DNA of 58,251 nt, counting the filler, from Sluysia triapertura (taxonomy: Eukaryota): assembly GCA_046118255.1 (NCBI GenBank). It is 4 parts of 4 records of this genome, joined end to end, with 100 filler letters (N's around TTAATTAATTAA, not from the genome) between each part and the next. Parts side by side here need not be neighbours in the genome. Positions count along the whole stretch, not along the records: positions 13,476 to 30,441 come from JBJNIA010194600.1; 3 more parts are not named here. One strand, given 5' to 3'. Positions 14,331 to 35,601 of this stretch are shown in pieces; positions within the stretch are counted from its first letter, which is position 1; each line of letters starts with the position of its first letter. The notes under the pieces were generated by a model. It searched no databases, had not been told where the DNA came from, and saw only the letters and a list, made by a program, of their open reading frames with translations. Position numbers and translations under genes: made by a program.

Positions 14331-15510
14331 TTTATTTTAATTCTTATTTGTATTTGCTGTTTTGCTGTTTGTACAGTGATTATTCTTTAAATGCTACTTT
14401 TGTTATTATTTTGATATTTCTAGTGAAAATAGTATGTTAGTAACTAAGTAGAATAACTTTAAGTTAGATACCTAACAATTACTTTTAATTGTGTAACTAA
14501 AAAAATATACTAAACATGCAAATTATAATTTTATTAATTTTACAATATAGAGGTAATTAAATTTTAAAAATATCAAAATTTAAGTGTCTCCAGTCTGCAG
14601 CGTATGTATACTTGTAGCTTTCTTTCATTTGTCGAAATAAATTTTTAGCCTCTTATTTAGTACGAGTCCGGCACTTCAGGCCTTTCTGGACTCATATTGA
14701 ATTTATGAAATCAATCCCAAGCAAGATATATTTTAAAAATAAATATTCTTTTATACTTTTAATATTATTCTAATTAAAATTTTTAATTAAGAAAAATCAA
14801 AACACAATTACAAGTTAAGTATTAATTATTAAATCAATGAAATTTAATTTTAATCAAATGACTTGAATAACTTAGAAAACCGTTGCAATTTCAAATATTT
14901 TCTTTTTAATTATTAAGTTCAGAATTTTCATGAAGTGGTTCAATCACTGAAGTTATTTAATTCATTATTTTCTCGATTTACTCAGGTAATATCCTCATAA
15001 AATCTGAATTTAGTTTGATTAAATATCCCAAAGAGTTTTAATCTTAAAATAATATTTGTTCCTTCTTCTATATTTAGTTCTTATATTTTACTAACGCCTA
15101 TTAGTTACTGTGATATTATTAAATTTTAATTTATATAATTGTTTTGATGATATAAAGACAATTTAAGAGAAAGATATAACAAATTTAGACAGAGTTACAT
15201 AGGGTGCCCCAAAAGTTACCGAACCGCAAACTTAAATAAAAATTAGATATCAAAAACTTCAAATGTAATTTATTTTGTCATTTTATGTTATCTTCGCTAC
15301 TGTTCATTTCCTTCTGCGAATAGTAGTCTTTGGAATGACTTGTTGCGCAGTCTTATTGACTTTATTCTGATATCATTGTTCAACGAGCGCTTATGGACCC
15401 TCATTCTTAAAAATGGGAATGTTAACAGATAGAGTTGTGTTTATTGTGACAATGAGAATTCCCATCGTATTGTTTAAACGGAAGTCAATGTTTCTGGAGT
15501 CACAGCCTGA

Positions 15511-15669
15511 TGTTGGGGTAAAAGGCCTAAAAGTGCCATTTGGGAAAATTGAATATAATAAAAATGAAATTGTTAGATGGGGCTGATAGCTCAGTGGTAG
15601 AGCAGTCGGACTGCGCAGACGATGGTCCCGGGTTCGATCCCCGGTCAGTCCATTTTACGAAGTCTAACA
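15511..15669 (+). mobile_element. tRNA-bearing solo-LTR-like element, copy 1 (Helenus-like)
   Basis: Begins TGTTGGGG and ends TCTAACA; flanked by direct repeat CTGA (15507-15510 / 15670-15673). Inserted in a transposase frame that becomes contiguous when it is removed. Homologous to 35459-35601. Confidence 0.85.
15580..15652 (+). tRNA. tRNA-like sequence (Cys/Ala-like) inside the LTR-like element; probably not a decoding tRNA
   Basis: 73 nt. Acceptor stem GGGCTGA/TCAGTCC, D arm GCTC-AGTGGTA-GAGC (A box), T arm CCGGG-TTCGATC-CCCGG (B box), followed by TTTT. The anticodon arm is irregular. Confidence 0.7.
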
Positions 15670-17039
15670 CTGAGCTGAAATCGGCCCTTTCTTCTTTGAA
15701 GGAACTGTTAATGGTGAACGTTACCTAGATATACTGAAGACTAAAGTGTTTCCTATTGTTATTGAGTTCCCCCATTTCGGTTATCTTCAATTTCAACAAG
15801 ATAGAGCAACTGCGCACTCTACCAAAGATGTTCGACAATGGCTTGGTGAAACATTTCCTGAACGTTGGATTGGACAAATCGAATGGTCTGCCAGATTCCT
15901 GGATCTGACACCGCTTGATTATTTTCCATGGAGAGTTCTAAAGAACACTGTTTATGCTAAAATTGATCAACTAAAATAAAGTATTAGCACGAATTGAATC
16001 AAATTTCAGAGGAAACTTGCCAGAAAGTATGTCGCAGTGTTGTCAAGAGTTGTCGTGCTTATATTGAAGTTTAAGGTGGATATTTTGAACATTTGTAAAT
16101 ACTAAATATACGTATTAAATTTGTCGTTTTGTTTTTGATATCTAATTTTTATTTAAGTTTGCTGCTCGGTTACTTTTTTGGATCCCTTTTATTAAGATTG
16201 TCATAGAAAACTCGATAAACGTAGTTTCAGACAATTCCTAGTGCGTAACAAATAATAATAAAAACCCTCAAATTAAAATAAAGTAAATTATAAATTAATT
16301 TAATTAGTTAGGAAGAAACCAATTAAATTATACGTTAAAGTTGATCATTTATGATTACAGATACGCTCATAAGTTATGCACTGTAACCAAACACTGTTAA
16401 AATTTATTTATAAATATATTTTAAATAATATGTAGAGTATAAATAAAAATCGTACCTAAATTGATTTGAAAATAGAGTTATTTAACTATATTGATTAATA
16501 TGAAAATATTCACGGAATCAAATAAAATTAATGTTTTAGAAATTATTTTCATTTTTGCTTCAATTAATAAATATATTTAAATATGTATTAATAAGTGAAA
16601 TGTATTAGATAAAATTTGGAATGTGTTTTACTATGAAAATAAAATATAATTTAAGCATTATTAAATATTAAAATTATAATATTAATATTAAATATTAAAA
16701 TTATAAAATTACATCCTGACTTGATATGGGCCTGTGTAACATAGGGTATTCTAATTTTAATATGTAGATATAAATATCCGCGACAAACCACCCCCACGTT
16801 TCCCTGGAGATGGGTGGGTTTGTTTGGGTTACTGGGTTACTAGTTTATTCGAGCGTACGTAATTTGTATTTTGTTAGAGTGAATATTACAGTAAATTTGG
16901 ATTGTTCCTAGTTTATCATTTATATACTACTCATTTGTGTATAGAACTTATTGTGTATAGAGGTTATTGTAAATCCACATTCATGGAACGAAATGGAAAA
17001 TTCACATTTTAAGTAGTCAAAGTTGATTTTAATGGTCTG

Positions 17040-18335
17040 CTAATGCCACCATTTAATCCGACAACAATCCAAATTTATACAAGAATGTGATTGAAGAGCT
17101 GTGGGTGATCCCGGATTCTTTATTTCAATATTACCTATGTCTTTTCTTTTTAATGATTTAAAAAACATTAAACAAACTTTATTAACTAACTTAATTACTA
17201 ACAAATAAGGCTTAAGGCCTGAACTATTTAATATTATCAACATTAACAATAAATACCAATGAACACAATATATTAATTTAAAACAATTAGTATAAGTTAA
17301 CAAAAATACTCCATTAAATGACAAATACAGTGTCTTATAAAAAACAGTTAGAAAACTTCGTCGAAAACCGGAAGAATTATCGTAACCAAAAGATAAATCG
17401 ACTACATAATTAGTGTTGACATTTTCGATATTACAAGCTATTTGAAGATAAATGTTTTTTTTCTCTTTCATTAACTCAAAACATCTTACATCATGGTCAT
17501 CTATATTCGATTTAGATAATTTTACGATAAAACGTCCAGCTTTCGGTATGCTTTTGTAAAAAATAGAATAACGTAAGTCGTGAGCTAATTCAAACGCGTT
17601 GTTGTAATAGCCTAATGAACAAAATGATGGCTTATATCTAACATTACAATATAATTTATGACATAACTTTATTTGAAATAAACTATCAGTTAAGTTGAGT
17701 TTAAAAAACAAAATATTATTCAAAACGAATAATTTAAATGTTTTAAAACATTTTATATTGTTTGATATTTTATATTTAGTAAATAAAATTTGTTTACTAT
17801 TAGTTATCATTCTGTCTCTTCGTTCACGCAGTACTTCTATTAAGCCATTCCCTTGTGTACTGTGTATATAAACTAACAGTAATCGCCTTTGATCAAAGAT
17901 TTGATAATTAGCAATGTCATTCATGCAAACTAAATAATCATTTCCACATTGATCGGCTCGCTCTTGCACCTCGAAACATACAGAAAAAGTAGACAGTTTT
18001 TTTATAAATTCACTAAAAGCTGCTTGATTAAATGAATTGTCTGAAGTATTCAACATTATTTTATAACGAGCTCCATTGTTTGGTACATAGCATTCCAGAT
18101 CCCCAGTGTAATAAACTAAGGGTTGTTAATATTTTAAAAGAAAATAATTACATTTATCTTCTTTAACTTGGATTTTTGCTTTAACATTTTCAACAGTATC
18201 AGTTGATTTAACTTGCTCTAATAATAATAAAAAATTGTTATTATTTTTATTAAAATTACTGTCATCTTCTGATTTTCCCAATATTCGTTCTACTTCACTC
18301 CATAACTTTCGGATATATGTAATAGATTTACTCAT
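17040..18335 (-). pseudogene. Intronless ubiquitin-like + internally deleted HECT E3 ligase ORF interrupted by one TAA
   Basis: ORFs 18126-18335 and 17040-18056 are in one frame. UBL: [18 protein letters not shown]...*QPLVYYTGDLE. HECT start: FIVKLSKSNI...GYDNSSGFRRSFLTVFYKTLYLSFNGVF. HECT end: IEIKNPGSPTALQSHSCINLD. Confidence 0.65.
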
Positions 18336-27733: not shown

Positions 27734-28954
<1,221 letters not shown>

Positions 28955-30371
28955 AGAGTAATAATTACGCACAATATAACCATCAACTAATTAAAATGGC
29001 AAACATTTAAATGACTTGCATTTTTTAATTTATTTTGATAATAAATTTGATAGATTTAAACAAATATTCTTTATTACGAAGAAAATTATTTACAAATAAT
29101 TTAATCAGAATATTAATAAGCTAATTTAATTTTATCAAATTTAAAATTATTTTTAATTATTTTAGGATTTTCTATTTTTTTATTATTTTTATGCATGATT
29201 TATTTTAATTATAACTTTTTTCTTTATTATTACTACTGTCCTCTTAATCTGTTTTTGATGTTAATTTCTCATGAAAATTTATTATCTTAGCTCATCAGTT
29301 TGTAAACAGAAAACCGCCTTCGCTTATATATCACATTTGATTGTTCATATACAATAAACTAAACGAATGCATCTACTCTCATAATATAGCGATTATTTTG
29401 TTGTTAAATTATGTATAAGTTTTGTCCTCTGTTTATGTCTATCAATTCAATAAATAATTTCTTTCAGGCTTGTCAATTAACATTTGTTAATATTCTCCAA
29501 AACAAGCAATTGTGCTTATAAAATTTAAGCATGATAAAGTGTATTAATTATTACTTAGCTTTTTAATTGATGTGTTTGAATAATATCATGTACCTTCTTT
29601 AATTTGATATAATTTTTCGAATATTTTTTCTAAAAAATTTATATAATTAGAAAATAAAGCATGATACTATATATAATAATTAGAACAAAAATTTAGTAAA
29701 ACAAAATAACAAAAATTTTTATCTAAGAAATAAATCAAACATGCAATGTCATGCAATTTAAACTACTTTTACTTCGAATTATTAAAGTTGAATTAAAAGG
29801 GACGAAATAATTTAGCTTAAACGAACAAATCGATATAACTGAGACATGTTATTCAATCTAATTAGCAAAATGGGTTTATTAAGATACTCATTACTGCAGA
29901 AACAAAAACGATTATTTCAAAATCTCATTCGACGTAATTCTTTTGTAACAGGTTGTGTCCGTATGTAAACTGATAAATCCTTATTTATATTTTTCATTAG
30001 TTTCATTAATAATTAAAATAAAACATATTTTAATATATTAATTGAAAATTTATTATTATAATTTTGTAAAAAAATAATATTAATAAATAATATTTCAAAT
30101 ACACAATTAATTAAATAATTTAAATACGATATATTTTAGAAAAATTATAAATTTTCAATATTACATGTAATTGTAAATTGTAAATTGTAATAAATAATAG
30201 TTTAATTTAATTTAGTTTATAACTGTGCATTCTATATAGGAGATATTCATTTTGATTTCTGGATTTTTATTATCTCTAAAATATAATGTAATCATTGATA
30301 AATATATAGCTGATAAAGATTTGGTAAATATGGGTTTGATCCTAAACCTTTACTAAATTATAAAGTAATAC

Positions 30372-35458: not shown

Positions 35459-35601
35459 TGTTAGACTGACCGGGGATCAAACCCTGGACCTTCTCTGCGC
35501 AGTTCAAATGCTCTACCACTGAGCTATCAGCCCCGTCTAACAATTTTATTTTATTACAGTCAATTTTACCACATGGCTCCTTAGGCCTTTTTACCCCTAC
35601 A
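35459..35601 (-). mobile_element. tRNA-bearing solo-LTR-like element, copy 2
   Basis: Minus strand reads TGTAGGGG...GGGCTGATAGCTCAGTGGTAGAGC...GGTTTGATCCCCGGTCAGTCTAACA. TSD TATA at 35455-35458 / 35602-35605. Lacks the CATTTTACGA-containing segment of copy 1 (deletion between two AGTC repeats). Confidence 0.85.

What the first reader, a model, noticed from the sequence alone, without database searches (positions are those of the whole stretch)
15507..15673. A ~150-bp TG...CA element with 4-bp TSDs that carries a complete tRNA-like Pol III unit (tRNA-bearing solo LTR)
Seen: 15511-15669 begins TGT, ends ACA and is flanked by CTGA/CTGA. It holds ~69 bp of leader, a 73-nt cloverleaf with intact A and B boxes, TTTT, and AGTCTAACA. 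It splits a transposase frame (GVTA*|AEIGPFFFEG), which defines its ends exactly. A second copy lies at 35459-35601 with a different TSD. A SINE has the tRNA at its 5' end, a simple-repeat tail and longer variable TSDs; this has the tRNA at the 3' end and integrase-type termini. Established (recalled): Cassandra TRIMs carry 5S rDNA in their LTRs, and Helenus non-autonomous LTR elements carry tRNA-like sequence, with 4-bp TSDs in animals. Inference: solo LTRs of a Pol III-driven non-autonomous LTR retrotransposon family that may be new for this lineage.
Basis: partly seen in the sequence, partly recalled or inferred. Interest (0 to 1): 0.85.

Follow-up and report, generated by a model that had tools for sequence, protein, structure and literature searches.

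The report
Solo LTR of tRNA-bearing miniature retrotransposon
The 159-bp unit is a real long terminal repeat of a very abundant, non-coding miniature LTR retrotransposon that carries a tRNA-like RNA polymerase III unit; this type of element (Helenus) was first described in 2024, so this is a new family of a known kind rather than a new kind of element.

Summary
Window 15511-15669 is a sharply bounded 159-bp repeat (TGTTG...TAACA) flanked by CTGA/CTGA. It holds a 69-bp leader, a 73-nt tRNA-like cloverleaf (Rfam tRNA, 50.3 bits), TTTT and a 13-bp tail.

- The host assembly holds about 13,400 copies of the repeat's 3' end.
- About 1,050 copies run on into TT plus a primer-binding site. About 725 are preceded by the purine-rich end of a ~93-bp internal region. 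This gives full elements of LTR-PBS-internal-PPT-LTR, about 410 bp.
- In a sample not chosen by likeness to the window copy, 15 of 23 lone LTRs have perfect 4-bp target duplications, against about 1% expected by chance.
- Related copies of the interrupted Tc1/mariner-like repeat lack the 159 bp and carry the target once.
- The primer-binding site matches the host's own tRNA-Trp(CCA) gene. The first ~45 bp of the internal region is a decayed complement of that tRNA.

These are the defining features of Helenus (Kojima 2024). No string specific to this family occurs in that paper's consensus file.

Pol III transcription is inferred, not shown. No autonomous partner was found, and the host organism could not be named.

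The parts
15507..15510 (+). Left copy of the 4-bp target site duplication (CTGA)
   Evidence: Related copies without the insertion carry the target once, as CTGG.
15511..15669 (+). 159-bp LTR (TGTTG...TAACA) of a Helenus-type TRIM. In this assembly it is a lone LTR.
   Evidence: The top 40 genome matches cover 1-159 at 96-100%. There are 13,362 LTR 3' ends in the genome. Contigs of an independent run diverge right after 15669 (table 7).
15511..15579 (+). 69-bp A-rich leader. It would be U3 if transcription starts at the tRNA-like unit. It contains TATAATAAAAA at 15554-15564, which is 16-26 bp upstream of the tRNA-like start.
   Evidence: It is the least conserved LTR segment in older copies (0.86). 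The U3 assignment and the role of the TATA-like stretch are inference.
15580..15652 (+). tRNA-like cloverleaf. The acceptor, D and T arms are intact. The anticodon arm is aberrant (4-bp stem, 11-nt loop).
   Evidence: ARAGORN, Rfam 50.3 bits, cloverleaf-like fold.
15587..15597 (+). A box (TAGCTCAGTGG)
   Evidence: Read. Conservation 0.92 in 22 older copies.
15631..15641 (+). B box (GGTTCGATCCC)
   Evidence: Read. Conservation 0.95 in 22 older copies, the highest of the segments not fixed by the way copies were chosen.
15653..15656 (+). TTTT, a putative Pol III terminator directly after the tRNA-like unit
   Evidence: Conserved in older copies. Its function is inferred.
15657..15669 (+). 13-bp LTR tail (ACGAAGTCTAACA), the putative U5 and integrase-recognised end
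   Evidence: In full elements it is followed by TT plus the PBS.
15670..15673 (+). Right copy of the 4-bp target site duplication (CTGA)
15250..15979 (+). Decayed Tc1/mariner-like transposon copy that received the insertion. Its TGG codon reads TGA at the target.
   Evidence: At least 1,321 first-look candidates in the genome, alignment to related copies, weak match to Sleeping Beauty transposase.

Best explanation
Window 15511-15669 is an LTR of a non-autonomous terminal-repeat retrotransposon in miniature (TRIM) of the Helenus type.

**Structure (shown).**
- The full element is about 410 bp: a 159-bp LTR, TT, a primer-binding site for the host's tRNA-Trp(CCA), a ~93-bp non-coding internal region ending in a purine-rich tract (GGGTGAGATA), and a second LTR.
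- Each LTR carries a tRNA-like unit with intact A and B boxes. A TTTT run follows it, 13 bp before the LTR end.
- The element inserted into a decayed Tc1/mariner copy and duplicated the 4-bp target CTGA.
- In this assembly only one LTR is left.

**Mechanism (inferred).**
- An integrase and reverse transcriptase supplied in trans by an autonomous, probably Gypsy-type, element copy and insert it. tRNA-Trp primes minus-strand synthesis.
- The tRNA-like unit serves as an internal Pol III promoter, not as a decoding tRNA. On this model the genomic RNA starts at LTR position 70 of the 5' LTR and must read through that LTR's TTTT. It ends at the TTTT of the 3' LTR. The tRNA-like segment would then be R, the 13-bp tail U5 and the 69-bp leader U3.
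For: - **Sharp ends.** All 40 best genome matches begin at position 1; 37 run to 159 and three stop at 155-157, at 96-100% identity. One identical copy sits at another locus with a different TSD, ATAG.
- **Copy numbers.** There are 13,362 LTR 3' ends, 1,052 LTR-TT-PBS junctions and 725 PPT-LTR junctions. The control pattern gave 0 each time.
- **Full elements.** Copies with an internal region of 88-94 bp were read directly.
- **TSDs.** Perfect 4-bp TSDs flank 13 of the 30 copies most like the window. In a sample taken by contig order, 15 of 23 lone LTRs have them. Two full elements have them as well. About 1% would match by chance at this base composition.
- **Empty site.** Related copies of the target repeat lack the insertion and carry the target once.
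- **Primer.** The host tRNA-Trp(CCA) gene (L147:87-158) ends CGGGCTCA. With CCA added, its complement equals the PBS for 10 nt in 33 of 38 junctions, 18 nt in L106 and 39 nt in L146.
- **Promoter-like conservation.** In 22 older copies the A and B boxes (0.92 and 0.95) are better kept than the leader (0.86) or the anticodon arm (about 0.45-0.77 per site).
- **Published match.** Kojima 2024 defines Helenus by the same anatomy and 4-bp TSDs in animals, with comparable sizes (LTR 104-323 bp, full length 311-1,263 bp).
Against: - No RNA evidence. The one run guessed to be RNA held the mariner flanks but not the LTR.
- The TTTT in the 5' LTR should stop Pol III before the PBS, so read-through has to be assumed.
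- Absence of further T4 runs in the transcript body is not significant (P 0.35).
- No autonomous partner with the same PBS or LTR ends was found.
- Eight of 23 lone LTRs lack a TSD.
- In assembled full elements the two LTRs are hardly more alike (0.80-0.96) than LTRs of different elements (mean 0.88).
- The purine-rich tract is short (8 purines in 10).
- The assembly breaks inside this repeat very often. The ratio of lone to full copies, and the lone state of the window copy, may therefore be assembly artefacts.
Confidence: 0.85

Rival explanations
1. It is the same element family, but the tRNA-like unit is a passenger or serves another role, such as RNA processing, export, packaging or a chromatin boundary. 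The genomic RNA would then be made by Pol II or by read-through from host genes, not by Pol III.
For: The TTTT directly after the tRNA-like unit would end a Pol III transcript in the 5' LTR before the PBS. There is no RNA evidence. T4 depletion in the body is not significant. Kojima 2024 also states that Pol III function of Helenus is unvalidated.
Against: The A and B boxes are the best-kept parts of the LTR across older copies, while the anticodon arm decays. The same layout recurs in independent Helenus lineages. Cassandra is reported there to produce transcripts from its Pol III promoter.
Confidence: 0.3
2. The window copy is a complete two-LTR element that the short-read assembly collapsed into one LTR. 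On this reading it is not a true solo LTR.
For: More than half of the first 100 listed LTR ends lie at contig edges. Many contigs stop a few bases into the internal region. The assembled full elements all have diverged LTRs, as expected if elements with identical LTRs cannot be assembled.
Against: LTR ends outnumber PBS junctions about 13 to 1. Lone LTRs with TSDs are also common among copies about 10% diverged from the window copy, where collapse is less likely. High ratios of LTRs to internal regions are normal for Helenus.
Confidence: 0.2
3. It is a tRNA-derived SINE moved by a LINE.
For: It is a short, high-copy unit with a tRNA-like Pol III unit.
Against: The tRNA-like part starts at position 70, not at the 5' end. 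There is no A-rich or simple-repeat tail. The ends are TG...CA with a fixed 4-bp TSD. PBS and PPT junctions exist. No other sequence context of the tRNA-like head was found.
Confidence: 0.02
4. It is a miniature cut-and-paste DNA transposon of the Ginger type (recalled: TGT...ACA ends, 4-bp TSD, integrase-like transposase).
For: It has TGTTG/TGTTA ends and 4-bp TSDs.
Against: The two ends share only 4-5 bases in inverted orientation (read). Copies occur as direct repeats around a tRNA-primed PBS and a purine-rich tract.
Confidence: 0.02
5. It is an ordinary tRNA gene family with conserved flanks.
For: The unit passes the Rfam tRNA threshold, and a TTTT follows it.
Against: The anticodon arm has a 4-bp stem and an 11-nt loop. 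There are about 13,000 copies, with precise insertion ends and TSDs.
Confidence: 0.02

Closest known systems
Helenus (TRIMp3), Kojima 2024, Biology 13:119 (PMC10886601)
   Same: Two short LTRs with a tRNA-like unit (A and B boxes) followed by a T run near the LTR 3' end. TG...CA ends. A PBS one to three bases after the 5' LTR. A short non-coding internal region ending in a purine-rich tract. 4-bp TSD, as in all animal families. Many lone LTRs. A tRNA-like part that is not a working tRNA and is not complementary to the PBS.
   Different: Strings specific to this family are absent from the published consensus file. The LTR count (about 13,400) exceeds the largest published family (5,575). The primer is tRNA-Trp, listed for only one published family (Helenus-2_SyJa). 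About half of the internal region is a decayed complement of the primer tRNA.
Cassandra TRIMs of plants (as described in PMC10886601)
   Same: A TRIM whose LTRs carry a Pol III-type small-RNA unit.
   Different: Cassandra carries 5S rRNA-like sequence and is found in plants; other TRIMs with 5S-like sequence have 5-bp TSDs there. This element carries a tRNA-like unit and has 4-bp TSDs.
PbTRIM of ants (Zhou and Cahan 2012, PMC3532108)
   Same: An animal TRIM with LTRs of 152-184 bp, 4-bp AT-rich TSDs, abundant solo LTRs and a tRNA-complementary PBS.
   Different: No tRNA-like unit is reported in PbTRIM LTRs. Its PBS matches tRNA-Leu, and the elements are 480-781 bp long.
tRNA-derived SINEs (SINE2)
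   Same: A short, high-copy retroelement with a tRNA-like Pol III promoter.
   Different: SINEs carry the tRNA head at the 5' end, a LINE-type tail and variable TSDs, and have no LTRs, PBS or PPT.

Membership tests
Helenus (TRIM with tRNA-like LTR) | Two direct LTRs around a short non-coding internal region, within the TRIM size range | tested here: met
   Full copies have LTRs of about 155-166 bp and internal regions of 88-94 bp. There are 1,052 5' junctions and 725 3' junctions.
Helenus (TRIM with tRNA-like LTR) | tRNA-derived sequence with A and B boxes inside the LTR | tested here: met
   ARAGORN and Rfam tRNA at 50.3 bits. The boxes are conserved in older copies.
Helenus (TRIM with tRNA-like LTR) | PBS just downstream of the 5' LTR, complementary to a tRNA | tested here: met
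   The complement of the host tRNA-Trp(CCA) 3' end plus CCA matches for 10 nt in 33 of 38 junctions, 18 nt in L106 and 39 nt in L146.
Helenus (TRIM with tRNA-like LTR) | Polypurine tract just upstream of the 3' LTR | tested here: inconclusive
   A conserved GGGTGAGATA abuts the 3' LTR in 725 junctions. It has only 8 purines in 10, which is weaker than the G-rich tracts of published families.
Helenus (TRIM with tRNA-like LTR) | 4-bp TSD (animal families) and TG...CA ends | tested here: met
   13 of 30 and 15 of 23 perfect 4-bp TSDs, plus the empty-site comparison.
Helenus (TRIM with tRNA-like LTR) | tRNA-like part is not the primer for its own PBS | tested here: met
   The tRNA-like 3' end (TCAGTCCA) does not complement the PBS beyond TGGTG (read). 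The primer is tRNA-Trp.
Helenus (TRIM with tRNA-like LTR) | Transcription from the Pol III promoter (the TRIMp3 concept) | not testable with these tools
   No RNA run held the LTR. This is also unvalidated for published Helenus.
Helenus (TRIM with tRNA-like LTR) | Mobilised by an autonomous Gypsy-type element sharing the primer type | tested here: inconclusive
   No non-TRIM element has the same PBS (that pattern would have passed only about 42% of other families). Other LTR ends followed by the canonical tRNA-Trp PBS exist but could not be fetched.
tRNA-derived SINE | tRNA head at the 5' end, LINE-type or A-rich tail, variable TSD | tested here: not met
Functional tRNA gene | Canonical 5-bp anticodon stem with a 7-nt loop | tested here: not met
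   The Rfam alignment shows a 4-bp stem and an 11-nt loop. This region is the most variable among copies.
Ginger-type DNA transposon (recalled) | Terminal inverted repeats of tens of bases | tested here: not met
   Only TGTT(G/A) is shared between the two ends (read).

The most novel reading that the evidence does not exclude
This would be a recently active, very high-copy Helenus lineage in a host group outside the published range. Its genomic RNA would be made by Pol III from the tRNA-like unit, reading through its own TTTT in the 5' LTR. Its minimal internal region would have been built largely from a read-through copy of the primer tRNA-Trp during reverse transcription. If so, it would be a good system for the first experimental test of Pol III-driven LTR retrotransposition in an animal.
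Probability: 0.3. Interest if true: 0.6.

Novelty: new member of a known kind. Interest (0 to 1): 0.42.

Why it matters
- **A second route for tRNA-like repeats.** Helenus-type elements show that tRNA-like Pol III units can spread through LTR retrotransposition as well as through SINEs. That kind was named only in 2024 and has not been validated by experiment.
- **Size and age of this family.** It has about 13,400 LTRs, more than twice the largest published family. It includes identical copies at different loci, and it occurs at 98-99% identity in three differently labelled organisms. It is therefore likely young enough to test.
- **Practical effects.** It will inflate tRNA gene predictions with about 13,000 false tRNA-Arg(GCG) calls. 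It is also a major cause of contig breaks in this assembly.
- **The internal region.** The finding that it is largely a decayed copy of the primer tRNA's complement is a small new observation on how minimal TRIMs may arise.

Tried and rejected
- **Shared internal sequence among young copies.** The 30 copies most like the window share nothing next to the LTR beyond AT-rich flanks. The sequence after the LTR in L008 is unique and then runs into another old repeat. The internal region was found only by the junction pattern.
- **First primer search.** A pattern built from the 12-nt consensus PBS found no tRNA gene. The consensus differs from the tRNA complement after 10 nt. The 18-nt variants led to tRNA-Trp.
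- **T4 avoidance.** The putative transcript body has no further T4 run, but this is not significant (P 0.35).
- **LTR pairs.** LTRs of one element are barely more alike than LTRs of different elements, so they cannot date insertions here.
- **Autonomous partner.** One search found only TRIM variants. One search gave leads only.
- **SINE sharing the tRNA-like head.** None was seen.
- **Host identity.** Sequencing runs carry coded names. The protein atlas search with a PBC exon gave nothing. I did not use the large protein searches because they give no organism names.
- **RNA evidence.** None was found.
- **Pfam on the transposase remnant.** No hit; only a weak match to a solved structure.
- **Genome letters.** C32 and the partner leads could not be read.
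Full report
**1.

One search shows CTGA at 15507-15510. The unit runs from 15511 (TGTTGGGG) to 15669 (GTCTAACA), and CTGA follows at 15670-15673. The neighbouring bases differ, so the repeat of the target is exactly 4 bp.

ARAGORN finds one tRNA in the piece, at 15580-15652 with anticodon GCG. Rfam's tRNA model matches it end to end at 50.3 bits against a gathering score of 29. Read from the sequence, the unit holds:
- a 69-bp A-rich leader;
- the 73-nt cloverleaf, with A box TAGCTCAGTGG (15587-15597) and B box GGTTCGATCCC (15631-15641);
- TTTT (15653-15656);
- a 13-bp tail.

The Rfam alignment shows intact acceptor, D and T arms. The anticodon arm has a 4-bp stem and an 11-nt loop, so a decoding tRNA is unlikely.

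**2. It is a sharply bounded, very abundant repeat**

A search of the host genome (619 Mb in 263,945 contigs) gave 2,047 first-look candidates. All 40 that were scored begin at position 1; 37 run to 159 and three stop at 155-157, at 96-100% identity. One is identical to the window copy but sits in other flanks.

A 27-base pattern for the LTR 3' end, allowing up to 3 mismatches, occurs 13,362 times. The control pattern occurs 0 times.

Contigs of an independent public run diverge right after 15669 (325 loose ends).

**3. The target duplication is real**

- Among the 30 copies most like the window, 13 have perfect 4-bp direct repeats.
- I took a second sample by contig order, not by likeness to the window copy. 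It held 28 complete LTRs: 15 lone LTRs with perfect 4-bp repeats, 8 without, 2 followed by the primer-binding site and 3 preceded by the internal region's end.
- At about 25% GC, a 4-base match is expected by chance about 1% of the time.
- The 28 duplicated targets are AT-rich (16% GC) and share no fixed sequence.
- Three related copies of the interrupted repeat lack the 159 bp. They read ...CACAGTCTGGGCTGGAATCGG..., colinear with the window once the unit and one CTGA are removed.
- The interrupted repeat is a decayed member of the Tc1/mariner group. It has a weak match to the Sleeping Beauty transposase catalytic domain (E 0.0012) but no Pfam hit.

**4. It is an LTR: full elements exist**

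Two of the first 30 copies ran on into TTTGGTGAGCCCA. The LTR end plus that string occurs 1,052 times with up to 2 mismatches, against 0 for the control.

The fetched loci show the whole element: LTR, TT, TGGTGAGCCCAC..., an internal region of 88-94 bp ending in ...GAATTGGGTGAGATA, and then a second LTR starting TGTTGGGG. The junction of that internal end with the LTR start occurs 725 times, against 0 for the control. Two of the full copies with readable ends have 4-bp duplications, ATAA and ATAC. The internal region has no coding capacity.

**5. The primer is the host's own tRNA-Trp**

A first search based on the 12-base consensus failed. Variants with a longer match (L008, L106) looked like a tRNA-Trp site. 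A pattern for the tRNA-Trp T arm and acceptor end then found two variants in the genome, ending GGGGTCA and GGGCTCA.

L147 holds a complete tRNA-Trp(CCA) gene ending CGGGCTCA. With CCA added, its complement equals the element's site for:
- 10 bases in 33 of 38 sampled junctions;
- 18 bases in L106;
- 39 bases in L146.

Beyond the first 10 bases, the internal consensus still aligns to the tRNA complement as far as the anticodon. The score is 37, against 24.9 ± 3.6 for shuffles, and 1 of 500 shuffles reached it. About half of the internal region is therefore a decayed copy of the primer's complement. I read this as a trace of plus-strand synthesis running far into the primer tRNA. That reading is inference.

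**6. What the tRNA-like unit does**

In 22 older copies, conservation differs by segment:

| Segment | Conservation |
|---|---|
| B box | 0.95 |
| A box | 0.92 |
| Leader | 0.86 |
| Anticodon arm | about 0.45-0.77 per site |

The LTR ends are also well kept, but part of that comes from how the copies were chosen.

This pattern fits selection on Pol III promoter elements in the source copies, not on decoding. A TATA-like stretch lies 16-26 bp upstream of the unit.

On the Pol III model, the RNA starts at LTR position 70 and must pass the TTTT of the 5' LTR. It ends at the TTTT of the 3' LTR. The tRNA-like segment is then R, the tail U5 and the leader U3.

None of this is shown. No run on record as RNA held the LTR, and the one run guessed to be RNA held only the mariner flanks. 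The lack of other T4 runs in the body is not significant.

**7. Comparison with what is known**

Kojima 2024 (PMC10886601) named TRIMs with a tRNA-like sequence in their LTRs Helenus. The paper reports:
- a PBS, a PPT and many lone LTRs;
- 4-bp duplications in animals and 5-bp duplications in fungi and plants;
- tRNA-like parts that mostly cannot be working tRNAs and do not match the PBS;
- probable mobilisation by Gypsy elements in animals;
- an untested Pol III role.

Published consensus sequences show the same layout of tRNA-like unit, T run and short tail ending in ACA, and often TT before the PBS.

All the defining features that could be tested here are met, except that the purine tract is weak. 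This is therefore a Helenus-type element.

Nine strings specific to this family do not occur in the paper's consensus file. The file is line-wrapped, so a single miss means little, but nine misses together do. No later paper extends Helenus.

Arthropod hosts in that paper are chalcidoid and cynipid wasps only. The present host cannot be named with these tools. It is an animal, with PBC-domain (Pbx/Extradenticle) exons in the window, and its DNA is about 25% GC.

**8. Age and spread**

- The window copy belongs to a young subfamily, with at least 40 copies at 96-100% identity and one identical copy elsewhere.
- Most of the family is about 10% diverged from it.
- Related subfamilies with other leaders, or with damaged tRNA-like parts, are 75-85% alike.
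- Contigs from runs labelled as three different organisms hold LTR pieces at 98-99% identity. Two of them lack the mariner flanks.

**9. Caveats**

- The assembly breaks inside this repeat very often, and many contigs stop just inside the internal region.
- Elements with identical LTRs probably cannot be assembled. The full copies seen are all old, with LTR-LTR identity of 0.80-0.96 against 0.88 between elements.
- The ratio of lone to full copies is therefore biased, and the window copy could be a collapsed full element.
- About a third of lone LTRs lack a duplication. Assembly chimeras or recombination between copies could explain this, but I did not test either.
- No autonomous partner was found.

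**10. Verdict**

This is a new, very large family of a kind described in 2024, and Pol III drive is still unproven.

Noticed in passing
window 28332-28972 (- strand): Two open stretches match the Pfam PBC domain (E 3.4e-17 and 2e-10). They are exons of a Pbx/Extradenticle-type homeobox gene, which shows that the host is an animal.
   Followed up: partly
window 17040-18056 (- strand): A 338-aa open reading frame in about 25% GC DNA, where stop codons are frequent, so it is unlikely to be chance. It has no Pfam match.
   Followed up: partly
L146 (G000:C178197:4600-4820), - strand: A diverged relative of the LTR is followed by TT and a 39-base perfect complement of tRNA-Trp plus CCA. This is far longer than a normal 18-base primer site, as if plus-strand synthesis had copied the primer down to its anticodon stem.
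   Followed up: partly
G000:C118396:392-412 and L147 (G000:C261660:1776-1847): The host has two tRNA-Trp-type 3' ends, ending GGGGTCA and GGGCTCA. The TRIM uses the GGGCTCA form. Several other LTR-like ends are followed by the site for the GGGGTCA form. L148 (the GGGGTCA place) is not called a tRNA by ARAGORN and has CCA encoded, so it may itself be a retroelement primer site.
   Followed up: partly
G000: C29988, C131737, C192765, C209924, C259702 and others: A recurrent variant in which the tRNA-like 3' end (GGTCAGTCCA) is joined directly to TTTGGTGAGCCC. It has lost 17 bases, including one T of the T run and the LTR tail. It occurs in at least 8 copies, so it may be a subfamily.
   Followed up: no
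G000, first 100 places: More than half of the listed LTR ends lie within about 130 bases of a contig edge, often with the contig starting near LTR position 86-88. This repeat is a major cause of breaks in the assembly.
   Followed up: partly
L003:1428-2079 (- strand): Fragments of an LTR-retrotransposon pol gene (Pfam Integrase_H2C2 and RT_RNaseH) lie next to an LTR copy in the opposite orientation. Autonomous LTR elements therefore exist in this genome.
   Followed up: partly
G000:C190082:455-485, C11142:2839-2869, C21925:1314-1344, C221888:8498-8528: LTR ends that are not of the TRIM are followed by the canonical tRNA-Trp primer site. The one in C190082 ends ...TTCTAACA, like the TRIM's ...GTCTAACA. 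These are candidate autonomous partners.
   Followed up: no
window 15250-15979: The interrupted Tc1/mariner-like copy is itself decayed. It has a TGG-to-TGA change at the insertion target and lacks about 18 bases present in related copies just downstream. The family has at least 1,321 first-look candidates.
   Followed up: partly
runs X2 and X3: Two differently labelled organisms hold the LTR at 98-99% identity but almost none of the mariner flanks. The TRIM family is therefore shared among close relatives, or has moved between them.
   Followed up: no
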